From Perna viridis (taxonomy: Eukaryota): DNA of 64,000 bases. The notes beneath the pieces are model-generated. The model made no database searches and was not told the DNA's origin. It worked only from the letters and a program-made list of their open reading frames with translations. The DNA is taken from NCBI GenBank assembly GCA_037379345.1, contig CM074518.1:682001-746000 (forward strand), in the 5' to 3' direction. The translations under genes were made by a program, and so were the position numbers. Below are positions 1-33,944 of this stretch, one piece after another. Numbering within the stretch: the first letter of the stretch is position 1; every line of letters begins with the position of its first letter.

Positions 1-660
1 TTTGTTCTCAGCTTGATTGATCGCTATGGAAACCTGAATATAAACATTGGAGGCAATAGCAAACATGAAGTGGCAGTTGATGGGAAAGGCTTTATAGCTG
101 CTTATTTAAGGGCTTTTTTAAGTACAATAGACTTAAACACAGACTTTAATGTCCAATTTAACCTGTCAACATGTATCCCAAAGGTAAGCAAACCTAATGA
201 GGACAACATCTACATTTTTAGTTTTCTTTACTTCTTTGGATTTATTTTTGTTGTCATGCAGGCATATGGTCTACGGTTGAGATGCAAAATTGCAACATTT
301 TTTTATCCAGAAAGAGATGAAGAGAGAAACAAGTTCCTCCAAGAAAAGATCTGTCTCAAGAGAAAATCTTATTTTAGTTGGATGAGACAACACATACTCT
401 CAAGGAATAAACAATTTCATATTGAAAATAGAATCACTATTCGTGGCTGGCTTCAATATAAATATCCTGTCTATGCCCGATTCTTCAGCTTTTGCCTTCC
501 AACAAAAAAGCAGTGCCTGAACTGTGATGTGGACTATGATGGAAAAAAAAGATTTTCAGTCTGTCCTGTCTGTAATTCAAACTACTGTGAGGAATGCTTT
601 ATTCATGAAATGAAAAATAACTGTGTTGTATGTGATACTAGGAATAAATCAAGAAAATAG
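1..660 (+). CDS. DCST-like gene A, 3' part of terminal coding exon (DC-STAMP domain protein, DCST1/2-sneaky-SPE-42 family); gene begins upstream of the window
   Basis: Open frame from base 1 to TAG at 658-660. It encodes the last TM helix (IYIFSFLYFFGFIFVVM), the family motif AYGLRLRxKIAxFFYPERxxER and a C-terminal CxxC-x12-CxxC-x4-CxxC-x9-CxxC (C4C4 RING-like) domain. About 86% aa identical (30 differences in 214 aa, hand count) to 17888-18547. Confidence 0.93.
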   Translation, partial: FVLSLIDRYGNLNINIGGNSKHEVAVDGKGFIAAYLRAFLSTIDLNTDFNVQFNLSTCIPKVSKPNEDNIYIFSFLYFFGFIFVVMQAYGLRLRCKIATFFYPERDEERNKFLQEKICLKRKSYFSWMRQHILSRNKQFHIENRITIRGWLQYKYPVYARFFSFCLPTKKQCLNCDVDYDGKKRFSVCPVCNSNYCEECFIHEMKNNCVVCDTRNKSRK

Positions 661-705
661 GACAATTGCTTAAACAAAATAGAAGGGAAACTAGTATTGG
701 TCAAA

Positions 706-813
706 AGGACCATTTCTTGTATTGTTTGTAAATAATAAAGCCATTGAATGATTATGATTTGTACCACATAGGACCATTCCTTGTATTGTCTGTAAATAAT
801 AAAGCCATTGAAT
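706..813 (+). promoter_or_regulatory. Duplicated 3'UTR segment with two AATAAA polyadenylation signals (734-739, 798-803) of gene A
   Basis: AGGACCATT..TTGTATTGT.TGTAAATAATAAAGCCATTGAAT occurs twice just after the stop codon. Confidence 0.5.
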
Positions 814-885
814 TATTTGTCTCACAATGGACCATTTTTTTCATTGCTTGTACAAGAACTAAAATTGCAACTAAGAACAGTGGAA

Positions 886-1752: not shown

Positions 1753-2021
1753 AGCCTATCATTCATAAAGTAAAATGTTCAACGATCTAATGCCTCTGTA
1801 GTTTTATTTCAACCAGGTACATGACCTTCAAAGTCATGTTTAGTGAGTAAATAAAATGCAAACAAATAAAACCCAATATTTTAAAATTAGTTTATCATCA
1901 TAATTTGACCTCACCAAGCATGAAATTGAACGTACAGTAGGATATTTAGGTAATACCAAACTAGGTACTGTGTATGTAAGCCACCATTTAGCCCCTCCAT
2001 AAAAAAAATATTTATTATTAC

Positions 2022-4203: not shown

Positions 4204-7200
4204 GAATTTTTACTCTGTTAGACAAAGCTTTTGACAGAAGATGGTCTATAAACTGAGCAGTCATGACACCTAAACAAAACAAAACAAATGGGAGAAAAAT
4301 TATCCACTACTTTCTAAACTTTTCAGACACATAGATTTGATGATACAAATTTCAAAATGTACATGTTAAATCAGTCTCCCATGTTTTTTGTTTTTGTTTC
4401 ACAAATTCAATACAAAGCATTTGCTTCTGCTTATCATAGGACTGAACCAAATATTTTTACATGTATGTCTAAAAGGCTATAAAATTAGGGTTTTCCCAAA
4501 GTCTTATCAGTGCACTGTACGCTTTTATAGCTAAACAACTGTTGAATCCAGTGAAAGAACGTAAATTTGCCTTTTTGCTGTCTAATTACGATCAATATGA
4601 ATCAAATGACCAAACAATCAGGCCAAAGCATCAACACAGCAGCCCAACCAGTAGTAGGACATATTCTGAGTTCTGTCTGATTACTCAAAGGCTTGATTCT
4701 TTCACCTCTACAGTGCAAAATAAGTTACTAACAGAATCCCAGGAAGGATGAGTTCTGAGAGACTCAAAAAGGTATTCAAACAACTTGTATCTTTCAGTAC
4801 TTTTGGATTCCATATCCTCGATGGCTAAACCAGTGAATAAGCAAGTCCCATTCTAATTAACTGCATTGGTGTGAAATATTCCAAATGAACATAAGCATAA
4901 GACTTTTGGTGAATAAAATCTTTACCAACTTAGACAAGAACTAATATGTTACACATTTTTTAACGGGTGTTGTTAATTGTTATGTGTTATGTGTTAAGAT
5001 AACAAATAATAATAGGAATATAATTATTGAAACTGAGCTTGTTACAATGATTATGATACTGTTTACAAGTAACAATATGTAAAATCAAAGACTGAAGTTT
5101 CCAAAGTCGCTAATCATCAAATATTCACTGTCACTGATTTTGGCATACTCTAAACATCTGAAATGGTACAAATGCGATATGCTCTAAAATCAGGGGACAT
5201 CCGCCAAAAATCTTGGTTCCCTTGATATCATTGTGTACTATTTTGTAACCATTATGATCCGAATGGCTATATATAGATATCCGTGTACTGATAATATATA
5301 TGACCTTTATATAATCAATTGTAATGAACGCCCTTGTTTGAATCAGAAACTGGGTGGTATTACGTAAATTCAATGCTAACCGATCATTATGATATTGACA
5401 GGGAACCAGTTTATGAACCAGATTAAGCAGCTGGCAATGAATACTCATAAATATTGGGGCTTGCTAATGCATATGACCTATATAGTCTTGTAACGAGTCT
5501 CAGTGCCTGAATCGGAAACAGGGTAATGTTCAAAGCTAAGTGATCATTTCATGTAAATTTTCTGTTCTCATTCAAGCAAGAAACACACGTAGATCACACC
5601 TGTATGATATTTAAGAGGTACATTTTTATCTCATATGAAGCTAGAACTATAATGCTGTGGTGGTGAACACGGCGAAGATCTGCTGGATTATGTGGCATAT
5701 AACTAAACATTAATGCAAATCATATGCGAATATCAAATACAGAAATTACGAGTGAAAGAAGTCGCTAACAGTATTAGCAACTTAAAAAGAGTTTTGTGCA
5801 GCATGTTAGTAACACAACTATAATCATGTTGTATACTGCACACAAAAAAAATTAATAAAATAAAATAAAAGAACAAAGCATCAGAAAACAGTTAGTTTAT
5901 TATTTATAAGAAGGTAACTAAGTGCAAAAGAAGACTACAATTTGAATTAATAAGTTTTCCATAATTACAATATTTTATAAGTTAAATCTGATTTAAAATA
6001 TAGAATGACTTAAATAATACATGTACTTCAAGTACTGCATGTGATTTTAAGTTGATATTCTCTGAAAAGGTATTTGAAAAAAGAAATGGCACATTTGTTC
6101 AAAAATATCAAATAACAGTACTATCTAGTGAAGTAGACAATCATATAAATGGTATATTATAAAACAAAACCTATTATCTTCATATATAATGCATCATATT
6201 TCCACAAATTTAACATTACATTTTCGAAGAAATAATGTAACGTTCTGCATAAGAACCTTTGTTTAAGGCTGTTTAACATCTTTTTAAATTAAAAAATGTA
6301 TCAAAATTTGACATGATGCTCATCTAGTGAAGAGTGATGCAAAGGTACTAATTTACGGTGGCCATATGTGTAGAAAAAACTTGAGATAATCAAAACTTTT
6401 TTCGAAACCAATACAGGACTTATGAAGAAAGACTGATGTCTACATTAGGGAATGCATTTGTGAAGTTACCCATCTATAAAAAAAATAGTAAAACTGTTCC
6501 CCAAATGGCGTCCCCTTCAGTTTCAGCAACTTTTCTCCTTTACCTTGCAGCCGAGTCATATTTTTGTCTCAAATGTATATATTTAGCAACCTAGGGTCAC
6601 TTATGATATTGACCTGCAGAGAACCAGTGATATAACTTTCTCCTAAGGTCACGTGAGAAATTAATACGCATGGGATCGACTGTCACCATGTGATCAAACG
6701 GGCTGATGAAACAAGTCGGAAAATAGTGTGAACTTATTATACAGAGTATTATGAAAGATTTGAAATTTCTCTTGTATTCTTTCCATTGACTATAGTCAGT
6801 GCCTAGAAACTAGATAGCAGATGCTTGTGAGTGCTACTGTAAAATATGATATCCGCTTAACGAGGCAAGATTTCGTTTGATACCTAGGACAATTTCAGCC
6901 ACTGCCGGGCTTCATTGACAAAAAAGGCCAAAAACTCCAACAAGGGTCAACAGATCTCTATGATTAGATTACATCATGCTGAATACTTATAGTCAAATTT
7001 TGTTTAAACCAATAATATAATTGTCCACAATACCCAAAAGGAACAATCCTAATATCAGTTCTGTCCACAATACCCAAAAGGAAACAATCCTAATATGAGT
7101 TCTGTCCACAATACCCAAAAGAATATATTTACAAAGAACATGTTTTAATGTTTTGGAAAGATTTTAATAATTACAACATGAAAATGAACACTGAAAAACT

Positions 7201-9494: not shown

Positions 9495-10430
9495 ATACAT
9501 AAACATACAATCATGCTGACAATCCCAGGGCTCATATGACCACCTGGGTACAGTCACATAAACATACAATCATGCTGACAATCCCAGGGCACATATGACC
9601 ACTTGGGTACGGTCACATAAACATGCAGTCATGCTGACAATCCCAGGGCTCATATGACCACTTGTGTACAGTCACAGAAACATGCAGTGATGCTGATAAT
9701 CCCAGGGCTCATATGACTACTTGTGCACAGTCACAGAAACATGCAGTCATGCTGACAATGTCAGGGCTCATATGACTACTTGTGCACAGTCACAGAAACA
9801 TGCAGTCATGCTGACAATGTCAGGGCTCTTGTGTCCACTTGTTTGTTTGTTGTTGGGGTTTAACGTCCGAGCAGCAGTATTTCAGCTATATTCAGACGAT
9901 GAACATGAAATTGATGATAAAATGAACATGAAATAATGATGAAATGAAAAAGGGATGGGACACAAGGATAATGGGGTCGACATATTTTGATTGCCACTGG
10001 AAATAGGGAGAAATGGGTAGGGTCAGGCAATTTAGCCTCCTGTGGCGAAGCCCTATGGTTCCTACTCCGGGAGAATACCACAGTAGGGTTCTTTCACGTG
10101 CGAGGAACATGGCATCTTTCCCAACACGGTGCACCACTATGGTTTGCAGTCAGGTTTTCCGTATTATAGCCTGACAACCCCAGCATGTAACACGCCAGGG
10201 GTACCCCATTCCACCACATCCCAGTTGCTCTGTGGGCAGAGCGCCCTAGCCCCTGGCTAGGGTTCTGAGCACTATTTAGTCGCCTTTTACGACAAGCTTA
10301 GCGCTGCTGCAGGCCTATTCTTTTAACACCCGGACCTGCACGGGGTGTGTCCACTTGTGCACAGTCATATAAACATGCAGTCATGCTGACAATGTCAGGG
10401 CTCCTATGTCCACTTGTGTACAGTCACAAA
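9495..10430. repeat. 59 bp minisatellite (~7 units) interrupted by a retroposon
   Basis: CATGCAGTCATGCTGACAATCCCAGGGCTCATATGACCACTTGTGTACAGTCACATAAA units at 9495-9842, resuming at 10346-10430. Confidence 0.9.
9843..10345 (-). mobile_element. Full-length SINE-like non-autonomous retroposon (~500 bp)
   Basis: 13-bp TSD TGTGTCCACTTGT (9830-9842, 10346-10358). On the minus strand it has a (CAAA)n-type tail preceded by ATATAGCTGAAATACTGCTGCTCGGACGTTAAACCCC and a central GCACGTGAAAGAACCC..GAGTAGG motif reminiscent of Meta/Nin-type SINE cores. GC and CpG content are elevated. Confidence 0.85.
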
Positions 10431-13095: not shown

Positions 13096-13741
13096 CACTT
13101 ATATTTTTCAAGATCGGAATTGTGATTTATTCTGTATCATAATATTTTTGGTAAGAAAGTTTTTTTTTTCCAGATTCCCAATCATAAAAATTTGGATGTT
13201 TAGGAATTGCGAATAAAAGTATTAATGTGTTTAAACATTGAAAACATTTTTTTATTCTTCTTTAAATTATTAAACTTGAAAAGTGTGCACAGTTTCTTTT
13301 TTCCATCAATGTACATTTATGTATTCTATGAATCCTTGGGAGACACATTCTTTGTATGAGCCATGGCTCCAAGGGTCTCCAGGGTTAACAGGTTTCATTT
13401 TGTTGATGCTTTGATGCATGCATGCCAAATTTCACAATTTGATGTCAATAGACTATGTATTTTACTCCTTATTCCCTCCAAAAATTTGATTAAATTGTCG
13501 ACCTAATTTCAGATAAATCTACATAAGATACTTATCCTGTTTAACTATTTTTATTCATGAATATCAGTTCTTCAGAAATCAGGCCAAAAATTTGTCTAGT
13601 TTCCTGCTTTTATTTTGGTGCCTTCCCTAAGCATTTAATGGCTTTTTTGGCTCAAACATCATTAAAGTCTAGAGTCTTACCTCATTGAACATACAATGTT
13701 TTTGAAAAATAAAATCATTATATTTTTCTTGCTGGTAGCAG

Positions 13742-13901
13742 NNNNNNNNNNNNNNNNNNNNNNNNNNNNNNNNNNNNNNNNNNNNNNNNNNNNNNNNNNN
13801 NNNNNNNNNNNNNNNNNNNNNNNNNNNNNNNNNNNNNNNNNNNNNNNNNNNNNNNNNNNNNNNNNNNNNNNNNNNNNNNNNNNNNNNNNNNNNNNNNNNN
13901 N
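13742..13901. other. Assembly gap (160 N)
   Basis: Run of N. Confidence 1.
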
Positions 13902-14251
13902 TTACTTCCAAAATATGGATAGCTGAATGAATTGTCTAGCAGGAGACTAATAGATTCAGAAAGTTGAAGCCCTGTTAGGCAGAATTTTTTTTCCATTCGA
14001 CAAAGATTCAAAATGATTTTTAAAACAAGTGTTTTAGTCATGGAAAATGTGATTGAACCAGTTCTGTGAGAAATGAGGTGAAGGTCAATACTAATGAGTT
14101 ACGTCTTTCTTACAAATGAGGAGAGGAGGGTAAAGTTTGAAAAAAGGGAGAGGGTCAAATTTCACTTAGTTATTTACAAGACTAAGTTCACATGTCAACA
14201 AAATATCCATATCCATATTTAATTTGTAATATTTGTTCCAACAGAAAAGCC

Positions 14252-15202
14252 ATGTACAAGGTTTCTTTTTCCTATAATGCTGATGCAAAGACAGATATCA
14301 ATCTTAAAGTTGGAGACATAATCACACAAGTAGAAGATGTTGGAAATGGTTGGTCATTGGGGTATAATGCATCATCAGGTAAAACAGGAACCTTCCCAAC
14401 AGAATTTATTATAAAAAAGGAATCGTTCAAAAACAAAATCAAAAGACTCTCACTGGCAAAGAGATCTTCAGACAAGATTAAACAGTCTCCAGTCAAGGCC
14501 AGTGAGGGGACCTTAATCCCCAGGGAGAAGGCAAAGATACCTGACAACATTCTCCACAGAAGACTTACATATCATTCTGGCAATAAGCAGGTAATAAGTG
14601 TAAAACTTCCAAATTCTATTATAAGACCAATTAAAACAGCCCAACATACCATACTTAGAAGTAGTCTTAGGAAGAAAAAAATCCTGAATAGTTTCTTTGG
14701 TTTTGTTGGCGGATTAATTGCTAGTGGAATTCTGTATGTTCTCCTGCGATACAGTTATGACTATTCTATAGAGACATCAGGCTGGCTTACCTTAGGATTT
14801 TCTGTCCCTATTTGTGTAGGGATGACACTATCTACACATATGCGTTGCATCATACTTTTAATGGTGCCAAATTTATTTACTGGAAAAGGCAGGACTGTCC
14901 TTATGTCAATTATTTTTGCCAAACTTTTAGCTGGGCCTGTTGTCAATATTGCATATAATGCTCAACAAGCATCTGAATCTATGGCATGTGCCCAGGAGCT
15001 AATTTACAACCAAACTCATCAACTCAAAAGACAACTAGAGGGGCCAATGCGCAGAATTGAAAAAACTATATACAATGGACTTGTGAAAGTTAGGGATGTA
15101 GCTCAAGGTATCAAGGACTTTATTCAGCCAGTATTGAAGGTCATAGACAGCTTCACAAGTGGGTTGGAAAAAGCTGGAAATGCCCTTAAAACAGCAGCTG
15201 AT
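14252..15202 (+). CDS. DCST-like gene B, coding exon 1: SH3 domain, basic linker, N-terminal TM segments, start of ectodomain
   Basis: Acceptor TTCCAACAG| at 14244, then GCCATG. SH3 signature YKVSFSYNADAKTDINLKVGDII..GNGWSLG..GKTGTFPTEFI. DCST motifs RCIILLMVPNLFTGKGR and GPVVNIAYN..ESMAC. Donor GAT|GTAAGT, phase 0. Confidence 0.9.
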
Positions 15203-16258: not shown

Positions 16259-16875
16259 AAATGTTCAAGTGGAGTTCAGTATGCCAAATCTAAGTGTGTG
16301 GATGGTATCAATGGAGCTAAAAGTGCCTGTGAGAGAGAACTCAGAAAAATTGATCCCACTAATAAAATCATTAACTTTAGTAAAGATACCTCAAACAAGG
16401 TTGTTGGATTTGGTAAAGATGCCAAGGGTAAAATTGTTGATTTTGGTAAAAGTATTGGAGATGGCATCAAAGGATTTTTTGGAAAAAAGAGAAAAAAAAG
16501 AGGAGCCATGATTGAGCAGGAAAAGGCAGCAATTGCATCAGCAAAGCAACTTATTGGTAGGGTAGAGAGTAGAAAACAACAGAAGATTAGAATGAACCCA
16601 TCAAACCAAGAAACATTCCTTACAAAGATTTCCCTGGACAAACCATCAACTAATGGAAATAACAATCTTGTAGAAAGCACACACTTTCCAAAACTGAACT
16701 TAAAAAATATATCTCATCAAAGCTTAATCCATAAAACAAGTCTGACAAGACAACTCCAATCAACAACAAGAAATCTAAGAACACCACTCGAACCAACAAG
16801 CAGTCTTACACTATCAGTCCAATCAACAAGCAGTCTGAAAACACCACTAAAACTGGCAATACATTCAATACAAAG
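16259..16875 (+). CDS. DCST-like gene B, coding exon 2 (Cys-rich ectodomain with large insertion)
   Basis: Acceptor CTTATCAG| (phase 0). KCSSGVQYAKSKCVDGINGAKSACE aligns with gene C exon 2 ECDKVIGKVYRKCVNGINDAYTKCKE. Donor AAG|GTAAAT (phase 2) joins the next exon in frame. Confidence 0.82.
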
Positions 16876-17262
16876 GTAAATCATATTTGATGTATTCTTT
16901 TTTTTTTTTTTTTGCACAAGATCATTGTCACAATAATTTATTGGTTGAAACTTGACCAAAATTAATGTGGTAACAAAAAGTTACCTGATACTTATAGGTA
17001 TTCATGGGTATCAAATAATCAATCATATCACAAACAATAATCAATGATACCATTGATTTATTTCAATCCAAACACAATCCAATTTTCATCTCAGTTCTTC
17101 AATTTTCTCAATGTTAGCGCGAAAGTATAGTTCAACTTTAGTTTTCCAATAGTTAATTTTCCTTTTCTTAAAACTTATAGCCCTTTTCTTCCATTAATTA
17201 AAAGCTGTATCTATTTTATCAGTTAGATTTTCTATAATTATCTATACTATTTTATATTTCAG

Positions 17263-18547
17263 ATATAAGCGGTTAAGTCTGCTAGACAAAATCTGTATTG
17301 CCTTAGACATTAGTGCTATATGTCAAGTCGTACAGTTGGGAGAATATGTAGTCTGTACACCTTTAAAATTCTTCTCCGACCTGATTGGCCTGACTACCAA
17401 TGGTATAAAGAAAGCCGTCTCCTCTGTGACTAACTTTTTTTACTTTGATTTTGATGGCAATTTTGATTCAACAGGAGACATCTCCTCATCAAAAACTGCA
17501 AAACAAATAGTATCAGAGGTGAAAGCAGACATTTTGTCTAAATTGGCAAAGTTTTCTGAAGCTGCAAGTATATTTGGGTATATAATGAGTTTAGCATTGT
17601 TAATACTATTCAGTAAGTCAGCTATATACCTACGGAAATTCTTGAGCAAGGACCGTTATGACAATTTCTACATAACTACTTCATTTAAGCAATATGACCT
17701 TGAATGTAGGGTAAATGGCAACAGCTCAGTTCTGCCTCTAAAAAGAGGAGAAAGGAGCAAGTATGTAGACACAAGGTCTCTCTTTCTGGTGTCTAAAGAG
17801 ATTGCTCACTTTAAACAGGGGTTTGGGAAGGTATTAATTCATCTCCTTATTGCAGCAGTAATCATCGTCTTTGATTACACCTTGTACTTTGTTCTCAGCT
17901 TGATTGATCGCTATGGAAACCTGAATATAAACATTGGAGGCAATAGCAAACTTGATGTATCAGTTGATGGGAGTGGGTTTATAGCTGCTTTCTTGAGGGC
18001 TTTTCTAAGCACAATAGACTTAAACTCAGATTTCGGTGTTGAATTTAACCTTACAGTATGTATTCCAAAGGTAAGCAAACCTAATGAGGACAACATCTTC
18101 ATTTTTAGTTTCCTTTATTTCTTTGGATTTGTTTTTGTTGTCATGCAGGCATATGGCTTAAGATTAAGACGCAAAATTGCAACATTTTTCTTTCCAGAAA
18201 GAGATGAAGAGAGAAACAAGTTCCTCCATGACAAGATCTGTATCAAAAGAAAATCATTTTTTGGTTGGATGAGACAACATATACTCTCTCGAAACAAACA
18301 ATTTCATATTGAAAATAGAATCACTATTCGTGGCTGGCTTCAATATAAATATCCTGTCCTTGCCCAATTCTGTAGCATTTGCCTTCTGACCAAAAAACAA
18401 TGCTTGAACTGTGACATGGACTATGATAAAAAAATAAGATTCTCAGTCTGTCCTGTCTGTAATTCAAACTACTGTGAGGAATGCTTTATTCATGAAATGA
18501 AAAATAATTGTCTTGTGTGTGATACTAGGAATAAATTCCAAAAATAG
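17263..18547 (+). CDS. DCST-like gene B, terminal coding exon (DC-STAMP domain, TM helices, C4C4 RING); whole protein 950 aa
   Basis: Acceptor ATTTCAG|A, in frame with the 17336 ORF. Motifs YLRKFLSKDRYDNFYIT, VLPLKRGER, AYGLRLRRKIATFFFPERDEER and a C4C4 RING. TAG at 18545-18547. Confidence 0.95.
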
Positions 18548-18559
18548 CACTACTGCTAA

Positions 18560-18845
18560 TACCAAATATAACCATTGCATGTTCAGAGACTGACCGTTGC
18601 TTTAACCAATTATAACCACTACATGTACTGAGTCTGACTGTTGTTTTAACTTGTTATAACCAATACATGTACCAAGTCTGACTGTTGTATTAACTTATTA
18701 TAACCAATACATGTACTGAGTCTGGCTGTTGCTCTAACCAATTATAACGAATAAATGTATCAAGTCTGGCTGTTGACTTAACCAAATATAACCATTGCAT
18801 GCACCAAAAATGATTCAATACATGTACAGAGTACAACTGTTGCTT
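18560..18845. repeat. Degenerate ~45 bp tandem repeat immediately 3' of the gene B stop codon
   Basis: TATAACCAATACATGTAC..AGTCTGACTGTTG units. Confidence 0.7.
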
Positions 18846-24595: not shown

Positions 24596-26600
24596 GTAAG
24601 ATATGAATATTTATAAATCTACCAGAGAGCAATCTTGGCTCAGACTTATATAAAAGATCACAGATAAGATATGTGCATCTTTAATGCCATTCAAGAAAAG
24701 TTCACGCTCAAATTGTACACCACAGGTAAGATATGAGTATCTTTCATGTCATTCGAGAACAGTCTTCGCTCAAATTGTAGACCACAGGTAAGATATGAAT
24801 ATCTTTCATGTCATTCGAAAACTGTCTTCACTCATATTGTAGACCACAGGTAAGATATGAGTATCTTTCATTGTCATTCGAGAACAGTCTTCGCTCATAT
24901 TGTAGACCACAGGTAAGATATGAGTATCTTTCATGTCATTCGAGAACAGTCTTCACTCGTATTGTAGACCACAGGTAAGATATGAGTATCTTTCATTGTC
25001 ATTCGAGAACAGTCTTCGCTCATATTGTAGACCACAGGTAAGATATGAGTATCTTTCATGTCATTCAAGAACAGTCTTCACTCATATTGTAGACCACAGG
25101 TAAGATATGAGTATCTTTCATGTCATTCGAGAACAGTCTTCACTCAGATTGTAGACCACAGGTAAGATATGAGTTTCTTTCATGCCATTCATCTACAGTC
25201 TTCACTCAGACTGTAGACCACAGGTAAGATATGAGTATCTTTCATGCCATTCGACCAGAGAGCAATCTTGGCGCAGACTATAGACCACAAGTTAGATATG
25301 AGTAATAATCACTCCACCAGAGAACAACCTTGGCTCAGAATAAAGACCACAGTAAGACATGAGTATCTTTCATACCATTCGACCAGAGAGCAATCTGGGC
25401 GCAGACTATAGACCACAAGTTACATATGAGTATTAATCATTCTACCAGAGAACAATCTTGGCTAAGACTATAGACCACAGTAAGATATGAGAATCTTTCA
25501 TGCCATTCAAGAACAGTCTTGGCTCAGACTGTAGACCACAGATCAGATATCAGTGTCTTTCATGCCATCTGGAACAACCTTGGTTCAGACTTTGTTTGGA
25601 AGAGAACAAATTTAGATTATAGACCAGAGGTAAGATAAAGAGTATTTATCATTCCATCTGAGAACAATCTTGGTACTGATTGGAAATTGTTGCTAAAACA
25701 TGAGACTGAGAACAATAAGGCTCAAACTATAGACCACTAATAAGATATGAGTATTTATCATTCAATCTTAGATCAACCTTTGCTCTTACTGTAAACTGTT
25801 GGTAAGATAAAAGTATTTATCATTCCATCTCAGAACAATTTGACTCAAACTGTAGACTACTGGTAAGATAAAAGTATTTATCATTCCATCTCATAACAAT
25901 TTGACTCAAACTGTAGACTACTGGTAAGATAAAAGTATTTATCATTCCATCTCAGAACAATTTGACTCAAACTGTAGACTACTGGTAAGATAAAAGTATT
26001 TATCATTCCATCTCATAACAATTTGACTCAAACTGTAGACTACTGGTAAGATATGAGTATTATCATTCCACCTGAAAATAATTATGGCTATGACTGTAAA
26101 CTGCTGGTAAGATGTGAGTATTATCATTCCATCTCAGAACAATTTGACTCAAACTGTAGACTACTGGTAAGATATGAGTATTATCATTCCACCTGAAAAT
26201 AATCATGGCTATGACTGTAAACTGCTGGTAAGATGTGAGTATTATCATTCCATCTGAGAATGATCATGGCTATGACTGTAAACTGCTGGTAAGATGTATT
26301 ATCATTCCACCTGAGAATAATCATGGCTATGACTGTAAACTGCTGGTAAGATGTGAGCATTATCATTCCATCTGAGAATAATCATAGCTTTGATTGTAAA
26401 CTGCTGGTAAGATGGGAGTATTATAATTCCACCTGAGAATAATCATGGCTATGACTGTAAACTGCTGGTAAGATGTGAGCATTATCATTCCTTCTGAGAA
26501 TAATCATAGCTTTGATTGTAAACTGCTGGTAAGATGGGAGTATTATCATTCCATCTGAGAATAATCATGGCTATGACTAAAATGCTGATAAGATGGTAAG
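24582..26600. repeat. ~60-63 bp minisatellite with gradually changing subfamilies
   Basis: TGTAGACCACAGGTAAGATATGAGTATCTTTCATGTCATTCGAGAACAGTCTTCACTCATAT units grade into CTACTGGTAAGATAAAAG and CTGCTGGTAAGATG variants. Confidence 0.95.
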
Positions 26601-27224
26601 ACTATAAACCAATGTGCAACTAAGATTACTTTTTATCAATGCTTGTTGCCATATTAGTTGCTTTTGGTTAGTACCCCTTAATGTTTAGCTTAATTGTCCA
26701 TTAAATACATCTCAGTCAATGAATCTGATTTTATCAGCTATTTCTTTGTTCTTCAATTGTTTTGTGTGATATTTATTTTGGCAGGCTACTGTTGTGATAC
26801 TAAAATTAACGGCAATATCAAATGACATCATTATGTCAAATCAATTGTGACATTACCGATATACAGATTAATGTCAGTTATGAATGTTTCAAAAGAAAAA
26901 AAACATCTCAACCTATCTGAACTCAATGTGATATTTTCTGTCTCTATTTCAAATTGCTGTTTCTCTGTATGTAAATGCATTATTCATTTGCATGAAAAAC
27001 TTCACTGAAAGCCATCAATACAAAAACAAATACTAGCCAAATCAAATCCATTAGTATGTGATAACACAACATTTGACCTAGCTCCCAAAGGTCACACTGG
27101 GTCCTTCTAGTAGAAGAGCTCTTTCAGTCTGACAAGGGTTACTCTGCTAGATTAATCCATTGATTGTTTTTCAATGCAACTTAGGTCACCACATCATGGC
27201 AAGATCATTTAATGCTATTCTAGA

Positions 27225-27790
27225 AAAGCTCTCTTAGCATAGCAAGGACATTATAAGAGGTTACTCAACTAGATGAGCTCTCTTAGCATGGCAAGGACAT
27301 TATAAGAGGTTACTCAACTAGATGAGCTCTCTTAGCATGGCAAGGACATTATAAGAGGTTACTCAACTAGATGAGCTCTCTTAGCATGGCATGGGCATTA
27401 TGAATAGATTACTCCACTAGATGAGCTCTCTTAGCATGGCAGGGCATTATGAATAGGTTACTCCACTAAATGAGCTCTCTTAGCATGGCATGGGCATTAT
27501 GAATAGGTTACTCCACTAAATGAGCTCTCTTAGCATGGCAGGGGCATTATGAATAGGTTACTCCACTAAATGAGCTCTCTTAGCATGGCAGGGCATTATG
27601 AATAGGTTACTCCACTAAATGAGCTCTCTTAGCATGGCAGGGCATTATGAATAGGTTACTCCACTAAATGAGCTCTCTTAGCATGGCATGGGCATTATGA
27701 ATAGGTTACACAACTAGATGAGCTCTGTCAACATGGCAGAGGAATTAAATAAACAAATTGGGTTACTCAACTAGAAGAGTTCTCCCAGCC
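27225..27790. repeat. 49 bp minisatellite x~11
   Basis: GAGCTCTCTTAGCATGGCAGGGCATTATGAATAGGTTACTCCACTAAAT units. Confidence 0.95.
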
Positions 27791-27836
27791 TAACAAGGGC
27801 ATTAAACACATGGTTTATAATTTTCATTATTTTCAG

Positions 27837-28544
27837 ATGTTCATTATGACTACAATGGAAGGTGAAGATGAATCTGATGTTTTTGAGCAAGTTAACAAGG
27901 TTGAAGGTGAAGGGGAACCTCATGTATTTGAGCAGAGATACAAGGGAGCAAATATTGAAAAGAAGAATCCAGGAGTTACATTTGCCAACATGTTATTTAA
28001 AAGTGATCGTCATACATTCACTTGTCTGAAAGCTGTTTTTGGGATATTTGGTGGTATTTTTGCTGGCGGTATCCTGTTTGTTATCCTTGTATACAGTTTT
28101 AACTATCCTTACAATCTTGCTGGTTATATTTGCTGTGGATTTACTTTTCTAGCTTGCCTTTTACTTGCCATTTCTGTTCATGTCAGATGTATCATGGTTC
28201 TTACTATACCAAGTTTGTTCACAAGTCGAGGAAGAGTAGCCATATTAGCCTTGATATTTGGATTACTTTTGTCAAGACCAATACGAAATATCTCCAACAA
28301 CATGTCAGAAGTTTCTCGCAGCATGGCATGTAGCACAGAGCTGTTCCATAATCAGACTTACTCCCTCCGACAACAACTGGAAATACCTATTGAAAAGATT
28401 AAGGCTGCCTTGCAAAGTCAGGGAGAGGACATCAAAAAGATAGGTGATACTATAGAAGAGGCTATTGAACCTATATACAAGGCTCTTGAGGCAGTGAAAC
28501 ACCATGTAAAAGAGGTCAGTGGAGCTCTGGACTATGCATCTAAG
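27837..28544 (+). CDS. DCST-like gene C, coding exon 1 (no SH3; short acidic N-terminus, TM segments)
   Basis: Acceptor TTTTCAG|ATG. FGIFGGIFAGGILF, RCIMVLTIPSLFTSRGR and SMACSTELFHNQT are homologous to gene B exon 1. Donor AAG|GTATCA is phase 0 at the homologous position. The exact start Met is uncertain (27837, 27846 or 27855). Confidence 0.9.
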
Positions 28545-28907: not shown

Positions 28908-29005
28908 GAATGTGACAAAGTAATTGGAAAAGTGTACAGAAAATGTGTTAATGGTATCAATGATGCATACACAAAATGCAAAGAAACATTAAAAAATGTA
29001 GCAAG
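28908..29005 (+). CDS. DCST-like gene C, coding exon 2 (98 nt; absent from the ORF track)
   Basis: ACTTTAG|GAA TGT..GCA AG|GTAAGT. Encodes ECDKVIGKVYRKCVNGINDAYTKCKETLKNVA(R). Phases 0/2 fit both neighbours. Confidence 0.88.
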
Positions 29006-29064: not shown

Positions 29065-30200
29065 AGTTCTGTCATTTACAGTAATGGTAATTCTGTCATT
29101 TATAGTGATGTCACTTCTGTAGTTTACAATGTTGTCAGTACTGTAACTTACAGTGATGTCACTTCTGTTATTTACAGTGATGTTACTTCTGTAGTTTAAA
29201 CTGTTGTAGTACTGTAACTTACAGTGATGTCACTTCTGTTATTTACAGTGATGTCACTTCTGTCATTTACAGTGATGTCACTTCTGTAGTTTACACTGTT
29301 TTCAGTACTGTAACTTGCAGTGATGTCACTTCTGTTATTTACAGTGATGTCACTTCTGTAGTTTACACTGTTTTCAGTACTGTAACTTACAGGGATGTCA
29401 TTTCTGTTATTTACAGTGATGTCACTTCTGTAGTTTACACTGTTTCCAGTACTGTAACTTACAGTGATGTCACTTCTGTAGTTTACACTGTTGTCAGTAC
29501 TGTAACTTACAGTGATGTCAGTTATATCATTTGTAGTTTACAGTGATTTCAGTACTGTTATTTATAGTGATGTCACAGAACAGTGATGTCACTTCCATTA
29601 TTTACAGTGATGTCACTTCCGTAGTTTACACTGTTGTCAGTACTGTAACTTACAGTGATGTCAGTTATATCATTTGTAGATTACAGTGATTTCAGTACTG
29701 TAATTTATAGTGATGTCACAGAACTATCATTTACAGTGATGTCACAGAACTATCATTTACAGTGATGTTAATTCTATAATTTACAGTGTTGTAAGTTCTG
29801 TCTTAAGAGTGATGTCAGTTGTTCCATTTGCTATTATGTCAGTTCTTTCATTAACAGTGATGTCAGTTCTGATATTTTCTGTGATGATAGTTCTGCCATT
29901 TACAGTGATATTACTTCTGCTTTTTACAATGACTCATAGTTCTGTCATACACAGAGATAACACACAACTACCATTTACACAGATGTCAGTTCTGTCATTG
30001 ACAGTTGTGTCAATTCTGTCATTTACATTAATGGCAATTCTGTCATTTACAGTGATGTCAGTTTTGTCATTCACACTGATATCTGTTCTGTCATTCACAC
30101 CAATATCAGTTCTGTCATTCACACTGATATCAGTTCTGTTGTTTTCAATGACTCGCAGTTCTTTCATAATAGTGATGTCACAAACTTTCATTTACAGTGA
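29065..30200. repeat. 24 bp minisatellite (intronic)
   Basis: TTTACAGTGATGTCACTTCTGTCA-like units with higher-order variants. Confidence 0.92.
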
Positions 30201-31522
30201 CATTATAGTCTTTATACTTACATCACTGTTTTAGGACAGCACTTATCAGTATGCATACTATCAAAAGTTAACAGAAGACATGAGCTTCACAATTAATTGT
30301 AACTAAGGATACATAGCAAAATCATTTAGTATAAAACCTAGGTTTAGTGTATATATCATTAATTTGTCCATTGCCATAAAGTGAAAGAAGGATGTGGTAA
30401 TGGTGGGTATCTCACTGTTTGTCGCTAAAATAAAGTTTTGTGGATGCAACTCTTCTGAAACTACTTCATGAATTCTTTTGATATACTGTGTGGTGTACTG
30501 TTGTAAAATGTAGATGTATACTACACCACCATCTTGATTTAGTGAGTTTTGTTGGAGTTTATGGAAACCTCTCCTCTGAAACTGTTCTATGAATTATTTG
30601 ATATTTTGTATGATGTCCTTGCTTCATTGCCTTTCTGTTTAGGCAAATTCCATTGAAGTTTTTGGGCAAAAGATGCTTCACAGAGCACAGCAAGATATAC
30701 CTGCTATGGGCACAAAATTAAAGCTTGATACAGATCTCAATTTTTACTGTGATTAAATGTAAAATACAGAATAATATTTTGACCAGAACAGAAGTTGTCA
30801 ATTCCTTTAACATTTGCAATAAGAATTTCAAAAAATAACAACAAAAGTGCTTTCTTATAAATGCCAGAATTTGTTTCTGGAAAATAAATAAATATCAAAA
30901 GCCTAGATGAAAAGAAATAAACAATTCACTATGTCATGGCACTTGGTCGAGATTTAAAGTCAAATAAAGAGCTTCACAGAGTGCAGTGGTGTAACTCAAA
31001 TATATACCACAAAATACAAAACTTTATAAACATTTTCAAAATCTGACCAAAAATGTAAAAAGTTGTTGTTTTTTTGGTGTGGCCCCTTCAACCCTTTACA
31101 TACTAAAAACTGTAAGAGATATCTGAAATCTGATTGAAAATGCAGGCAAGGATTTCCATAAGAAATCAAATAAATTATTTTGATATTGGACCAAAAATAA
31201 AAAAGTTTATGTTTTTGGGCATGGCCCAAAATGTGTGACCCTTTTAGTCGTAAAAAAGGTAAAGATAAGAATACCCTGTAACAATTTTTAAAACAACATT
31301 TCATAGGGAACAGGTTTACATCAGAATCATAAAAAATGGATTATTAATAAACTTTTTCTATCAATTCAATGATCCTTTTAAGCCTCTTCTTTCAAAAAAG
31401 GGGTGGGGCAAAACCTTAAAAAAAAAAAAAAGCAACAACAGAGCTTTCTGCCATGTCATTAGGAACAATGTGTTTATAGCTTTCAAAAATTAATTTCAAA
31501 ACTCAAAAATCATAAATAATTA

Positions 31523-32597
31523 CAGAGAAACCTGTCTAAATAGAACCCTGAATCATCCAACAACCTGTCTAAACAGAACCCTGAATCATCCAATGACCTG
31601 TCTAAATAGAACCATGAATCATCCAATAACCTGTCCAAACAGAATCATGAATCATCCAATAACCTGTCTAAATAGAAACATGAATCATCCAATGACCTGT
31701 CTAAAGAGAACCATGAATCGTCCAATGACCTGTCTAAACAGAACCATGAATCATCCAATGACCTGTCTAAACATAACCCTGAATTGCCCAATAACCTGTC
31801 TAAACAGAATCATGAACCATCCAATAACATGTCTAAATAGAACCCTGAATCATCCAATGACCTGTCTAAACAGAACCATGAATCATCCAATGACCTGTCT
31901 AAACAAAATTATGAATCATCCAATAACCAGTCTAAACAGAACCATGAATCATCTAATAACATGTCTAAACAGAGCCCTGAATCATCCAATAACCTGTCTA
32001 AACTGAACCCTGAATCATCCAATAACCTGTCTAAACAAGACTATTGAGAGTCCCTTTATATCAGTTTATTAATTAATTAATTAATTTGTTAATTAATTTT
32101 GACCCTGGATAAACCAAAACCATTTGAAGATCCAAAAGGTCTTCAGTTTAGGAACATGTTTCACTGCAAAGGTCCAAAAGGGGTTCAGTTTACATATGTT
32201 TCACTGTAAAGGTCCAAAAAGGGATTCTGTTTAGAAATGTTTTACTGTAAAGGGCCAAAAGGGGTTCAATTTAAACATGTTGAACTTCGGAGGTCAAAAA
32301 GGGGTTCTGTTTAGAAATGTTTTACAGTAAAGGACCAAAAGGGGTTCAGTTTAAACATGTTTTACTGTAAAGGACCAAAAGGGGTTCAGTTTAAACATGT
32401 TTTACTGTAAAGGATCAAAAGGGGTTCAGTTTAGACATGTTAAATTTCAGAGGTCCAAAAGGGGTTCTGTTTAGAAATGTTTTACTGTAAAGGGTCAAAA
32501 GGGGTTCAGTTTAAACATGTTTTACTGTTAAGGTCCAAAAGAGTTCAGTTTAGACATGTTTTATTGTAAAGGTCCAAAAGGGGTTCAGTTTAGACAG
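31523..32597. mobile_element. Tc1/pogo-type MITE remnant whose ends are amplified into 33 bp (~15x) and 40 bp (~11x) tandem arrays
   Basis: The left end TA|CAGAGAAACCTGTCTAAATAGAACCC is the near reverse complement of GGGTTCAGTTTAGACATGTTTTACTG|TA in the right array. Confidence 0.65.
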
Positions 32598-32707
32598 GCA
32601 CACTTATTTCTATGGTCAATTAAATCTTTGGTTTGATGAAAAATATAAAACTGATCATTGACTATCCTTATTCAAAGAGGTCCTGATATTATTTGATCTG
32701 ATTTCAG

Positions 32708-33944
32708 ATATGTTCCAAATTTTGATGATGTACTTTGCCAAACACTTACCATTGATGAAGTCTGTAGAGTGGTCAGCACAAATATCCTGTGTTCTCCAGT
32801 CAAGGTATTGGATCAAGCTGCTGAAAACATTGCTCAACACTTGATTAACCTTGTCAATCAAATCAAAAAATGGTTTAAGTTTGAGATCACTAATAAATCT
32901 ACAGCTGACAAAGTTTACAATGCATCTAAAACAGCCAAGGAACTTATACAAGAAGTAGGCACAGCACTGACCGAAAGGAAGGGCACCTTCACAATAGCAG
33001 TTGATATTTTCAACAAATGTTTGGCACTTTCTCTCATTCTACTTCTCATCCAGGCAGTATTTTACTTAAAGAACTACTTAGCAAAAAATGAATACGACAA
33101 CATCTATATTACCTCCAAGTTTAAAGAGTATGATTCAGCATGTAAAGAGAGAAACGAGCAAACCGTTCTTCCTCTCCGTAAAAAGGAACGAAGGACATAC
33201 ATCAATACCATACTACCAAGAATGTCATCACGTGAGCTCAGAGAAATGGAGATGGGTACTGTCCTGCTCCTACTGCACATGCTTCTAGCTGCACTGATCA
33301 TATTTATTAACTATGTGTTTTACTATATCTTGTACCTTGTTAATAGATATGGTAAGGTCAACGTAGAGGTCACTGGAGAAAGTAAAATCAACCTCAGAGT
33401 CAAAGGTGGTACTATGGCAGATTTCATAAACCTGTTCATTAAAAACATAAATATTGAAAATACATATGAAGCTAGCTACAACACAACACTCTGTCTTCCA
33501 GATCCGACAGCACCTGGCATTGATGATATCCCTGTCCTCTGTGGGGCTTATTTCACTGCGTTTATGTTTGTCATAATGCAAGCTTATGGGAAAAGACTGA
33601 ATAGAAAGATATGTGCTTTTTACTATCCAGAACAAGAGCAAGATCGCATAACTTTCTTGCATAAAAAAATGCTCTATAACAGAAAGCAAGAACACATGTT
33701 CATAAAGCAACATGTAAAGTCTCTACAATTTCAAAAGCAGGCAGAAAAAAGAATGTCGCTTAAAAACATTATACGTCCATGGTCCAAAGGTGTGGTAAAT
33801 GATAATTTCTGTATGAAATGTGGGGAAGATCAAAACTCAACTAATTCAATGAATGCATGTAAGCACCAAACATGTAAAGCAACATATTGCAAAGACTGTT
33901 ATACTGATTTTGGACAGACATGTCCTATTTGCAGAAAATATTAG
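32708..33944 (+). CDS. DCST-like gene C, terminal coding exon (DC-STAMP domain, C4C4 RING); whole protein ~680 aa
   Basis: Acceptor ATTTCAG|A (phase 2). Motifs YLKNYLAKNEYDNIYIT, VLPLRKKER, AYGKRLNRKICAFYYPEQEQDRI and CMKC..CKHQTC..YCKDC..CPIC. TAG at 33942-33944; AATAAA at 33955-33960. Confidence 0.95.

What the first reader, a model, noticed from the sequence alone, without database searches (positions are those of the whole stretch)
1..33944. Tandem expansion of at least three intron-poor DCST/sneaky/SPE-42-like fusion-factor genes with divergent architectures
Seen: three same-strand paralogs. B and C share 3 coding exons with identical intron positions and phases (0, 2). A and B are close (~86% aa over the visible part); C is distant. 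Known: the family (mouse DCST1/2, fly Sneaky, worm SPE-42/SPE-49) is needed for sperm-egg fusion and usually occurs as one pair of genes, many-exon in vertebrates. Inference: this is a lineage-specific, intron-poor subfamily diversifying modularly (with or without SH3, with or without a cleavable ectodomain insert). It could be a gamete-recognition or somatic cell-fusion system in an invertebrate.
Basis: partly seen in the sequence, partly recalled or inferred. Interest (0 to 1): 0.75.

Follow-up and report, generated by a model that had tools for sequence, protein, structure and literature searches.

The report
Extra DCST-like gene cluster in bivalve
A bivalve chromosome carries a cluster of intact genes related to the sperm-egg fusion factors DCST1/DCST2 but belonging to a separate, little-noticed third branch of that family, so invertebrates may have more of this cell-fusion machinery than the literature assumes.

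Summary
The window contains the 3' end of gene A and complete genes B and C, all on the + strand and all with a DC-STAMP domain and a C-terminal 8-Cys RING. B and C each have 3 coding exons with introns at the same positions and phases (0, 2). A and B are 86% identical; B and C about 31-34%. The N gap lies about 290 nt upstream of B's ATG, outside every modelled exon.

A is a true paralog, not a haplotype copy (dS 0.2-0.4). B and C are not DCST1/DCST2 orthologs: multi-exon orthologs of those lie on two other chromosomes, and six AU tests reject every such grouping. But the subfamily is not lineage-specific. It is a third clade whose members with a known organism are molluscs, brachiopods and echinoderms. 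This genome has five intact copies, in two clusters that each place a B-type gene before a C-type gene.

The SH3 domain and the ectodomain insert flanked by polybasic sites are ancestral in molluscs. The C-type lost both. All copies are under purifying selection, and only the insert evolves fast.

No RNA evidence was obtained, so function (gamete versus somatic fusion) is inferred. The relation to vertebrate DC-STAMP/OC-STAMP could not be tested.

The parts
1..660 (+). Gene A (B-type), visible 3' part of exon 3 including the stop. The rest of A lies upstream of the window: exon 1 at L017 1795-2799, exon 2 at 5643-6904, exon 3 from 7376.
   Evidence: Pfam DC_STAMP E 3.5e-20. 86% aa identity to B. 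Upstream exons found.
514..633 (+). A: C-terminal 8-Cys RING-like zinc finger
   Evidence: Cys pattern located
13142..13741 (+). Upstream region of B shared with the upstream region of A (93% identity). Part of a 5' tract more similar than the rest of the genes.
   Evidence: dS is 0.07 over the first 146 codons, against 0.3-0.6 elsewhere.
13742..13901 (.). Assembly gap (N), in the A-B intergenic/promoter region. Not in any modelled exon.
14192..15202 (+). B exon 1: optional 20-aa leader, SH3, disordered linker, TM1-3, start of the ectodomain helix. Phase-0 donor GTAAGT at 15203.
14255..14410 (+). B: N-terminal SH3 domain
   Evidence: Pfam SH3_1/SH3_2/SH3_9. In the model of the Mytilus ortholog this part has pLDDT about 90 and matches solved SH3 domains.
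16259..16875 (+). B exon 2 (617 nt): a conserved 3-Cys head followed by a 170-aa variable insert. Phase-2 donor GTAAAT.
16484..16501 (+). B: first polybasic (furin-type) motif, KKRKKR
17263..18547 (+). B exon 3: completes the second polybasic motif R-Y-K-R across the exon 2/3 junction, then Cys-rich ectodomain, TM4-6, DC_STAMP domain (17657-18229), RING (18401-18520) and stop.
27810..28544 (+). C exon 1: no SH3; TM1-3 and start of the ectodomain. Phase-0 donor.
28908..29005 (+). C exon 2 (98 nt): the 3-Cys head only, no insert. Phase-2 donor GTAAGT.
32708..33944 (+). C exon 3: ectodomain, TM4-6, DC_STAMP domain (33093-33662), RING (33810-33932) and stop.

Best explanation
The window holds three intact members of a third clade of DC-STAMP/RING six-pass membrane proteins. 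The clade is separate from both DCST1/Sneaky and DCST2. Its members of known organism come from molluscs, brachiopods and echinoderms, and databases label them 'DCST2-like'.

Genome layout. There are five intact copies on one chromosome, in two clusters that each place a B-type gene upstream of a C-type gene on the same strand: A-B-C in and just before the window, and E-D 1.3 Mb away. Broken exon-1 relics lie beside each cluster. Canonical multi-exon DCST1 and DCST2 orthologs sit on two other chromosomes.

The two types. B-type keeps the ancestral molluscan architecture: cytoplasmic SH3, three TM helices, a long helical ectodomain hairpin, three more TM helices and a cytoplasmic RING. In the AlphaFold2 model of the Mytilus ortholog, the distal end of that hairpin carries a variable, disordered spacer. 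In A the spacer is mucin-like. In nine molluscan proteins and in A, B and E it is bounded by polybasic R-x-K/R-R motifs. C-type has lost both the SH3 and the spacer.

Inferred mechanism (not shown).
- B-type and C-type form a heteromeric complex, as DCST1/DCST2 and DC-STAMP/OC-STAMP are reported to do.
- The complex acts in cell-cell recognition or fusion, most likely between gametes of this broadcast spawner.
- B-type is matured in the secretory pathway by furin-type excision of the spacer, which leaves a two-chain protein.
- SH3 and RING couple the complex to cytoplasmic partners.

Shown here: gene models, copy number, clade placement, domain content, motif conservation and purifying selection. 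Inferred: heteromer formation, cleavage, cell type and role in fusion.
For: Domains.

Gene models.

Copy number: one search gives five single-ORF full-length DC_STAMP matches on C8 plus exon-sized matches on C3 and C7. One search finds exon 1 of A, B, E, C and D plus a relic with stop codons. One search finds five exon-3 copies. One search shows that the second cluster is a B-like gene followed by a C-like gene.

Canonical orthologs. Oyster DCST1 (P0069) residues 284-721 map as 10 separate pieces on C7. A Saccostrea DCST2-like protein (P0168) residues 337-732 map as 7 pieces on C3.

Trees.
- 152 rows.
- 61 rows, careful search (bootstrap/SH-aLRT): DCST1 clade 100/100, DCST2 100/99, third clade 96/95, B-type 99/98, C-type 98/97.
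- AU tests on 34 rows reject B+DCST1 (p 8e-6), C+DCST2 (3e-4), B+C+DCST2 (3e-4), B+DCST2 (1.5e-5), C+DCST1 (1.6e-6) and B+C+DCST1 (1e-4).

Taxa. All 15 third-clade rows for which a source named an organism are molluscs (10), a brachiopod (2) or echinoderms (3).

SH3. Pfam scores above cut-off in Mytilus, Pinctada, scallop, Haliotis and Lingula members.

Insert. 9 of 26 aligned full-length rows have an insert of 51 aa or more with polybasic motifs. Of these, six are named molluscan proteins or cluster tightly with Pinctada proteins, one sits in the bivalve B-type clade, and two are unnamed sisters of the Haliotis protein. 16 of 26 have 20 aa or fewer and no motif. A, B and E each have both sites.

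Structure. AlphaFold2 of the Mytilus ortholog: SH3 pLDDT about 90, one long helix 213-348, insert 351-442 below 50. Hydropathy gives 3+3 TM segments and none in exon 2.

Selection. dN/dS is 0.16-0.36 in exons 1 and 3 for A-B, B-E, A-E and C-D.

B in other individuals. 27 of 29 contigs laid from 4 runs of 4 studies match B at 99% or more.

Linkage in Mytilus. B-type and C-type orthologs sit on records of identical length in M. edulis and M. trossulus.

Precedent. Passages of PMC8989947 report the DCST1/DCST2 complex and their mutual stabilisation.
Against: No transcript evidence for A, B or C. The 'RNA?' runs cover introns as evenly as exons and show no joints, so they behave like DNA.

Nothing here shows testis or sperm expression, cleavage or heteromer formation.

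The one somatic hint: a table in PMC7023338 lists a contig annotated 'DCST2' as up 3.2-fold in Mytilus hemocytes. Which paralog it is cannot be told.

A's exon 2 donor is weak (CAG|GTTTTT), so A may be spliced poorly or differently.

The ectodomain outside the insert shows no excess of amino-acid change (omega 0.17-0.27). That does not fit a fast-evolving gamete-recognition surface.

The tree has no outgroup and no vertebrate DC-STAMP/OC-STAMP, so 'third clade' means only 'outside the DCST1 and DCST2 clades'.

My reading of shared record lengths as linkage is an inference.
Confidence: 0.6

Rival explanations
1. The third clade is the invertebrate counterpart of vertebrate DC-STAMP/OC-STAMP. 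The B-type/C-type pair would then work in somatic cell-cell fusion or aggregation (for example of hemocytes), not in gametes.
For: The clade lies outside both DCST1 and DCST2, and this genome has canonical DCST1/2 as well. A 'DCST2'-annotated contig is listed as up-regulated in Mytilus hemocytes (PMC7023338). DC-STAMP and OC-STAMP are also described as a pair with a non-canonical RING (PMC8989947 passages).
Against: PMC8989947 states that invertebrates have solely DCST1/2. Its tree is in a supplement that I could not see. In the Atlas search the chordate 'dendritic cell-specific transmembrane protein' cluster scored only 0.78, against 0.95-0.96 for DCST-type clusters that carry the RING family PF26037. 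No DC-STAMP/OC-STAMP sequence could be obtained for a test. The paralog behind the hemocyte contig is unknown.
Confidence: 0.2
2. One reading: a lineage-specific, newly arisen intron-poor subfamily that is gaining and shuffling modules (SH3, cleavable insert).
For: The copies do differ in SH3 and insert. The duplications A/B, B/E and C/D are specific to this lineage or its close relatives. In the same genome, the region that is one exon in B and C is split into 7-10 pieces in the canonical genes.
Against: The clade includes brachiopod, chiton, gastropod, heteroconch and pteriomorph bivalve and echinoderm members. SH3 is present in Lingula, Haliotis and scallop members, and the insert with polybasic sites in Haliotis-group and scallop members. 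The variation therefore reflects loss in the C-type. dN/dS is 0.16-0.36.
Confidence: 0.1
3. B and C are plain orthologs of DCST1 and DCST2, and A is a haplotype or assembly duplicate of B.
For: Sources name the relatives 'DCST2-like', 'DCST1-like' or 'sneaky-like'.
Against: All six AU tests reject the groupings. Separate DCST1- and DCST2-like multi-exon loci exist on C7 and C3. A-B dS is 0.21-0.40, the exon 2 lengths are 1262 and 617 nt, and intron 1 is 2.8 kb in A and 1.0 kb in B.
Confidence: 0.02
4. Some or all copies are decaying pseudogenes of no function.
For: Broken exon-1 relics lie next to both clusters. A has a weak exon 2 donor. There is no RNA evidence.
Against: All 15 exons of the five genes are open. 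Branch estimates that I derived by hand from the pairwise values give omega about 0.24 for A and 0.19 for B. The 1262-nt repetitive exon 2 of A has no stop.
Confidence: 0.05

Closest known systems
DCST1 / DCST2 (mouse, zebrafish, rat); Drosophila Sneaky; C. elegans SPE-49 / SPE-42
   Same: Pfam DC_STAMP domain, about six TM helices, a large helical and Cys-rich ectodomain, and a cytoplasmic C-terminal non-canonical RING. The genes occur as a linked pair of distant paralogs, and DCST1/2 are reported to form a complex and stabilise each other (PMC8989947 and PMC8055269, passages read).
   Different: The window's genes form a separate clade, and all groupings with DCST1 or DCST2 are rejected. They have 3 coding exons, whereas this genome's own DCST1/2 genes split the equivalent of exon 3 into at least 7-10 pieces. 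B-type has an N-terminal SH3 and an ectodomain spacer bounded by polybasic motifs. The genes lie in tandem on one strand; mouse Dcst1/2 are transcribed in opposite directions (PMC8055269). Five copies instead of two. A role in fertilisation is not shown.
DC-STAMP / OC-STAMP (vertebrate osteoclast and giant-cell fusion)
   Same: The same Pfam domain, multi-pass topology, a cytoplasmic RING-like tail, and a paired action proposed in the literature (PMC8989947 passages).
   Different: The relationship could not be tested because no sequence was obtainable. The Atlas feature score was lower (0.78) than for DCST-type clusters. The literature says invertebrates lack them.
[quoted passage not shown]
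   Same: Direct orthologs or close paralogs. Mytilus P0014 is 58-62% identical to B, with the same exon-wise collinearity, SH3, insert and both polybasic sites. An Atlas cluster of 80 mostly molluscan members has SH3 in 69% of them.
   Different: These are database predictions only. My searches found no paper that describes them as a distinct clade or notes the SH3 or the insert. This genome has extra copies: three B-type and two C-type.
Proprotein-convertase-processed membrane and secreted proteins that lose an internal spacer at two dibasic sites (recalled, not from a call)
   Same: A variable, disordered spacer bounded by two conserved R-x-K/R-R motifs in a lumenal/extracellular loop, with conserved cysteines on both sides.
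   Different: This is an analogy only. Cleavage is not shown here.

Membership tests
DC-STAMP-like domain proteins (Pfam PF07782) | Match to the DC_STAMP profile above the curated cut-off (25 bits) | tested here: met
   A 73.1 bits (truncated by the window edge), B 167.9, C 169.8
DC-STAMP-like domain proteins (Pfam PF07782) | Multi-pass topology of about six TM helices with a large loop between TM3 and TM4 | tested here: met
   Hydropathy gives 3 segments in exon 1 and 3 in exon 3 for both B and C, and none in exon 2. The AlphaFold2 helices of Mytilus ortholog P0014 agree.
DCST-type (RING-bearing) members | Cytoplasmic C-terminal non-canonical RING with conserved cysteines | tested here: met
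   An 8-Cys pattern with paired C-x2-C (C-x4-C at one pair in C) in A, B and C. These Cys columns are invariant or nearly invariant in 26 relatives. PF26037 zf-RING_DCST1_C is precomputed for 9 of the 13 listed relatives and for all 7. The local Pfam copy gave no PF26037 hit.
DCST1 / Sneaky orthogroup | Falls inside the clade that holds named DCST1/Sneaky proteins of vertebrates, insects and molluscs | tested here: not met
   The clade has 100/100 support without the window's genes. AU p is 8e-6 (B-type), 1.6e-6 (C-type) and 1e-4 (both). A separate DCST1-like locus lies on C7.
DCST2 orthogroup | Falls inside the clade that holds named DCST2 proteins of fish, insects and oysters | tested here: not met
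   The clade has 100/99 support without the window's genes. AU p is 1.5e-5 (B-type), 3e-4 (C-type) and 3e-4 (both). A separate DCST2-like locus lies on C3.
DC-STAMP / OC-STAMP orthogroup | Groups with vertebrate DC-STAMP or OC-STAMP in a tree | not testable with these tools
   No such sequence was among the 150 listed representatives or in the word-based searches. The Atlas returns no sequences.
Sperm fertilisation factors (functional class of DCST1/2, Sneaky, SPE-42/49) | Testis/sperm expression and a requirement for fertilisation | not testable with these tools
   The run search found no holder on record as RNA. The four runs laid behave like DNA: introns are covered and there are no joints.
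Furin/proprotein-convertase substrates | Conserved R-x-K/R-R motifs in a lumenal/extracellular segment, and actual cleavage | tested here: inconclusive
   The motifs are conserved in A, B and E and in 9 of 26 aligned relatives, at both ends of a low-pLDDT loop. Cleavage itself cannot be tested here.

The most novel reading that the evidence does not exclude
Bilaterians ancestrally had a third DCST-type gene line besides DCST1 and DCST2. It is intron-poor and, at least in brachiopods and molluscs, carries an SH3 domain. It survives in lophotrochozoans and echinoderms, repeatedly duplicates into linked pairs, and is either the long-missing invertebrate counterpart of DC-STAMP/OC-STAMP or a second fusion/recognition machine that works independently of the first. 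In molluscs its B-type subunit would be activated by furin-type excision of a variable mucin-like spacer at the membrane-distal end of the ectodomain, a priming step not described for any DC-STAMP family protein.
Probability: 0.25. Interest if true: 0.75.

Novelty: new variant of a known kind. Interest (0 to 1): 0.55.

Why it matters
DCST1/2 are among the very few fertilisation factors conserved from worms and flies to mammals. The field currently treats invertebrates as having only those two (PMC8989947).

A well-supported third clade, with its own architecture (SH3, 3 exons, an ectodomain spacer bounded by polybasic motifs) and with recurrent linked duplications in broadcast-spawning molluscs and echinoderms, has three consequences.
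- It changes the family's history.
- It shows that database labels such as 'DCST2-like' mislead.
- It offers testable candidates for gamete or hemocyte fusion in animals where the fusion machinery is unknown.

The proposed excision of a spacer at the end of the ectodomain would be a new regulatory idea for this family.

Tried and rejected
Haplotype or assembly duplicate (A = B): rejected by dS, exon 2 length and intron length.

1:1 orthology with DCST1/2: rejected.

Positive selection on the ectodomain: pairwise omega is 0.17-0.27, no higher than in the TM and cytoplasmic parts. With so few sequences this is a weak test.

RNA support. The run search listed no holder on record as RNA. The four runs laid cover introns like exons and show no joints. 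They therefore only show that B exists as DNA in other individuals.

Solved structures. A sequence search found none. A fold search with the model of the Mytilus ortholog found only SH3 domains.

Vertebrate DC-STAMP/OC-STAMP for the tree. They were not in the 150 listed representatives. A profile search brought only echinoderm proteins and two fish DCST2. The Atlas gives names only.

AU test under the mixture model on 61 rows did not finish in two calls. I replaced it with 34 rows under LG+G4.

Whether the 3-exon plan and the B-then-C adjacency hold outside this genome stayed unchecked.

Literature. Searches found no paper on a third DCST clade, on SH3-DCST fusions or on bivalve DCST function.

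Spliced models were never joined. All searches, alignments, trees and dN/dS were done exon by exon, and the full-length fold used a natural Mytilus protein instead.

Full report
WHAT IS THERE

The window is G000:C8:682001-746000 of a 723-Mb, 46-contig genome. Its closest named relatives are bivalves. Mytilus proteins are 58-62% identical to B, and scallop and pearl-oyster proteins 35-40%.

Pfam finds the DC_STAMP domain in three + strand ORFs: 13-657 (gene A, cut by the window edge), 17336-18544 (B) and 32769-33941 (C). It finds an SH3 domain in the ORF 14192-15226. A is 86.0% identical to B over 215 aa. B and C share 31% in exon 3 and about 34% in exon 1.

GENE MODELS

Read from the sequence:
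- B has exon 1 at 14192-15202 (donor GTAAGT, phase 0), exon 2 at 16259-16875 (acceptor tatcag, donor AAG|GTAAAT, phase 2) and exon 3 at 17263-18547.
- C has exon 1 at 27810-28544 (phase 0), exon 2 at 28908-29005 (donor AAG|GTAAGT, phase 2) and exon 3 at 32708-33944.
- Both exon 3 acceptors read TTTCAG|A TAT.
- The exon sums, 2913 and 2070 nt, are in frame.

Independent support for C comes from P0023. This 664-aa protein sits on a 2082-nt contig from a related organism, too short to hold introns. Its residues 16-216, 217-249 and 249-662 map in order onto the three exons of C. The Mytilus protein P0014 (864 aa) maps in the same way onto B: residues 1-318, 319-432 and 435-863.

B may start at 14192 or at the ATG at 14252, where the Mytilus and Pinctada orthologs begin. 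Every search, alignment, tree and rate estimate was made exon by exon.

THE GAP

The only N run is 13742-13901. It lies 290 nt upstream of B's first ATG and touches no modelled exon. Its flanks are collinear with the upstream region of paralog A, at 93% identity on the left and 91.6% on the right. The gap therefore sits in B's promoter region inside the duplicated unit. I did not read, print or fill in its letters, and I did not test continuity with reads.

GENE A

The rest of A lies upstream of the window, in L017 (C8:674001-683000). Exon 1 is at 1795-2799, exon 2 at 5643-6904 and exon 3 from 7376. All are open.

A is not a haplotype copy of B:
- dS is 0.215 in exon 1 and 0.40 in exon 3.
- Exon 2 is 1262 nt in A and 617 nt in B. 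A's exon 2 carries about 27 copies of an 11-aa Thr/Ser/Pro-rich unit.
- Intron 1 is 2.8 kb in A and 1.0 kb in B, and the introns do not align.
- A's exon 2 donor is weak (CAG|GTTTTT).

The first 146 codons and the upstream 600 nt are much more alike than the rest: dS is 0.07 there against 0.3-0.6 elsewhere. This looks like a 5' gene-conversion tract.

COPY NUMBER

A whole-genome scan with PF07782 gives five matches that cover the whole domain in one open frame, all on C8. They are A, B and C, plus two on the minus strand at 2.03-2.04 Mb. It also gives exon-sized pieces on C3 and C7.

The second cluster is a B-like gene (E; 78-86% aa identity to B) followed, 3 kb on, by a C-like gene (D; 84-87% to C). 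Searches with B exon 1 and C exon 3 find the same five genes. They also find a relic of exon 1 with stop codons at C8:2059152-2059573. Another short SH3-exon fragment lies at C8:671164-671276, upstream of A.

Between the two clusters only exons align.

WHICH FAMILY BRANCH

An exhaustive HMMER search with B exon 3 found 749 representatives at E up to 0.001, of which the best 150 were listed. Of the 165 sequences then held, 13 covered fewer than 300 residues of the query and were dropped.

The 152-row tree shows three groups. A careful 61-row tree (LG+C20+F+G4) gives these supports (bootstrap/SH-aLRT):
- The clade with oyster DCST1, wasp Sneaky and an axolotl DCST1-like protein: 100/100.
- The clade with fish DCST2, beetle and oyster DCST2-like proteins: 100/99.
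- The third clade that holds all five genes of this genome: 96/95.

All 15 third-clade rows with a named organism are molluscs (10), Lingula (2) or echinoderms (3). The other rows carry no name.

AU tests on 34 rows under LG+G4 reject every union of B-type and/or C-type with DCST1 or with DCST2 (p from 1.6e-6 to 3e-4).

This genome's C7 locus matches oyster DCST1 best, in 10 separate pieces for residues 284-721. The C3 locus matches oyster DCST2-like proteins best, in 7 pieces for residues 337-732. Canonical, multi-exon DCST1 and DCST2 therefore exist elsewhere, and 'intron-poor' is a real contrast within one genome.

Within the third clade:
- B-type has 99/98 support and C-type 98/97. Each contains a scallop protein and mytilid proteins, so the B/C split predates the divergence of these pteriomorph bivalves.
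- A and B are sisters (100/97).
- C and D are sisters (98/76).
- E groups weakly with a protein of another organism (91/54).

MODULES

SH3 scores above the Pfam cut-off in Mytilus and Pinctada B-type proteins, in the scallop member of the C-type clade, in Haliotis and in one Lingula protein. A search with B's own SH3 finds 19 of 234 held proteins. The mytilid C-type proteins (C, D, P0023 and five Mytilus orthologs of 667-681 aa) have none.

I examined the loop between the conserved Cys groups in an alignment of 26 full-length third-clade proteins.
- 9 rows have an insert of 51-105 aa with R/K-x-K/R-R motifs. They are five B-type bivalve proteins, scallop P0019, Haliotis P0033, and P0036 and P0043, which group with Haliotis. 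Six of the nine have two such motifs. The other three have one plus a second dibasic site.
- 16 rows have 20 aa or fewer and no motif.
- One echinoderm row has a Pro-rich insert with no motif.

A, B and E have GKKRKRR, GKKRKKR and GKKRRRR at the first site. At the second site they have R-H-K-R, R-Y-K-R and R-I-K-R, which is split by intron 2.

SH3 and the insert are therefore old, and the mytilid C-type lost both. The variable part of the insert is the only fast-evolving region: 44-55% aa identity, omega 0.36-0.60, and length 205 versus 420 aa.

STRUCTURE AND TOPOLOGY

Hydropathy gives three TM segments in exon 1 and three in exon 3 for both B and C, and none in exon 2.

An AlphaFold2 model of the Mytilus ortholog (mean pLDDT 68) shows a confident SH3 (about 90), a disordered linker and one very long helix (213-348). 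The insert (351-442) is below pLDDT 50 and is followed by returning helices. The insert thus sits at the far end of a helical hairpin in the TM3-TM4 loop.

With a cytoplasmic SH3 at the N-terminus and a RING at the C-terminus, that loop should be extracellular or lumenal. That is where proprotein convertases act. This last point is my inference.

Fold search against the PDB finds only SH3 domains. No DCST-type structure is solved.

SELECTION

Pairwise dN/dS in exons 1 and 3 is 0.16-0.36 for A-B, A-E, B-E and C-D. Branch estimates that I derived by hand from those values give about 0.24 for A and 0.19 for B. Ectodomain parts outside the insert have omega 0.17-0.27, no higher than the rest. All five copies look functional, and there is no sign of diversifying selection outside the insert.

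READS

The run search listed no holder on record as RNA. I laid four runs from four studies on 14000-18560. Their contigs cover introns as evenly as exons, and there are no joints. They behave like DNA.

They show that B exists in other individuals: 27 of 29 laid contigs match at 99% or more, whereas A and E are only 83-93% identical to B at the DNA level. They say nothing on expression or splicing.

MECHANISM

By analogy with the reported DCST1/DCST2 complex and its mutual stabilisation, and with DC-STAMP/OC-STAMP (passages of PMC8989947), I propose that B-type and C-type subunits form a heteromer. The basis:
- Both clusters keep the order B-type then C-type.
- B-type and C-type orthologs of Mytilus edulis and M. 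trossulus lie on records of identical length.

I further propose that the B-type precursor loses its spacer at the two basic sites.

A gamete role is the most likely reading, because DCST1, DCST2, Sneaky and SPE-42/49 all act in sperm. A hemocyte role cannot be excluded: a 'DCST2' contig is listed as up 3.2-fold in Mytilus hemocytes (table of PMC7023338), and which paralog it is cannot be told.

WHAT IS KNOWN

PMC8989947 states that invertebrates have solely DCST1/2. A 2026 preprint says that DCST1 and DCST2 cannot be told apart in all lineages. My searches found no paper on a third clade, on the SH3 fusion or on the insert.

The proteins themselves are in public databases as predictions. An Atlas cluster of 80 mostly molluscan members has SH3 in 69%.

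I read passages of PMC8989947, PMC8055269, PMC8830517, PMC7023338, PMC5620054, PMC10491289 and the 2026 preprint. I read no supplement. Fig. S1A of PMC8989947 may bear on the claim of novelty.

UNCHECKED

- Relation to DC-STAMP/OC-STAMP (no sequences could be obtained).
- Expression.
- Cleavage.
- Heteromer formation.
- Continuity across the gap.

Noticed in passing
window 13142-14690, and L017 774-2300: The upstream 600 nt and the first 146 codons of A and B are far more alike than the rest of the genes: 93% DNA identity and dS 0.07, against dS 0.3-0.6 elsewhere. This looks like a recent 5' gene-conversion tract between the tandem paralogs.
   Followed up: partly
L017 5950-6900 (C8:679950-680900), exon 2 of gene A: About 27 tandem copies of an 11-aa Thr/Ser/Pro-rich unit (of the TTPIQQTTSSL type), in frame and without a stop. 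It is a mucin-like expansion of the ectodomain insert, absent from B and E.
   Followed up: partly
L012 7164-7276 (C8:671164-671276) and C8:2059152-2059573 (-): Relics of B-type exon 1 beside both clusters. The first is a short SH3-exon fragment upstream of A. The second is an exon-1 copy with TAA and TAG stops upstream of E.
   Followed up: partly
window 19595-21599, 24655-26594, 27220-27747, 29067-30139, 31529-32596, 34080-34994: Dense satellite-like tandem arrays (units of 24-95 nt) fill the B-C spacer, reach to within 65 nt of C's ATG, occupy much of C's 3.7-kb intron 2 and follow C's stop. Several give long spurious ORFs.
   Followed up: no
window 17411-17581 (run X2, record 19): One 2.1-kb contig of run X2 differs from B at 67 places between 16063 and 18098. 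Of the 40 differences printed, 30 lie at 17411-17581. It may be a divergent allele, a conversion tract or a contig that mixes paralogs.
   Followed up: no
window 9839-10345: A 500-nt element with 93% copies at C8:656345-656857 and C8:2053437-2053957. It is a dispersed repeat, and it overlaps the retroposon head noted in earlier finding s1-781962.
   Followed up: no
P0027 and P0047 (Lingula); Antedon P0044, P0205, P0207: Third-clade paralogs of other phyla also sit on records of identical length: 230,234 nt in Lingula and 38,962,182 nt in Antedon. The two Lingula proteins are sisters in the tree. Linked duplication of this clade may therefore be recurrent.
   Followed up: no
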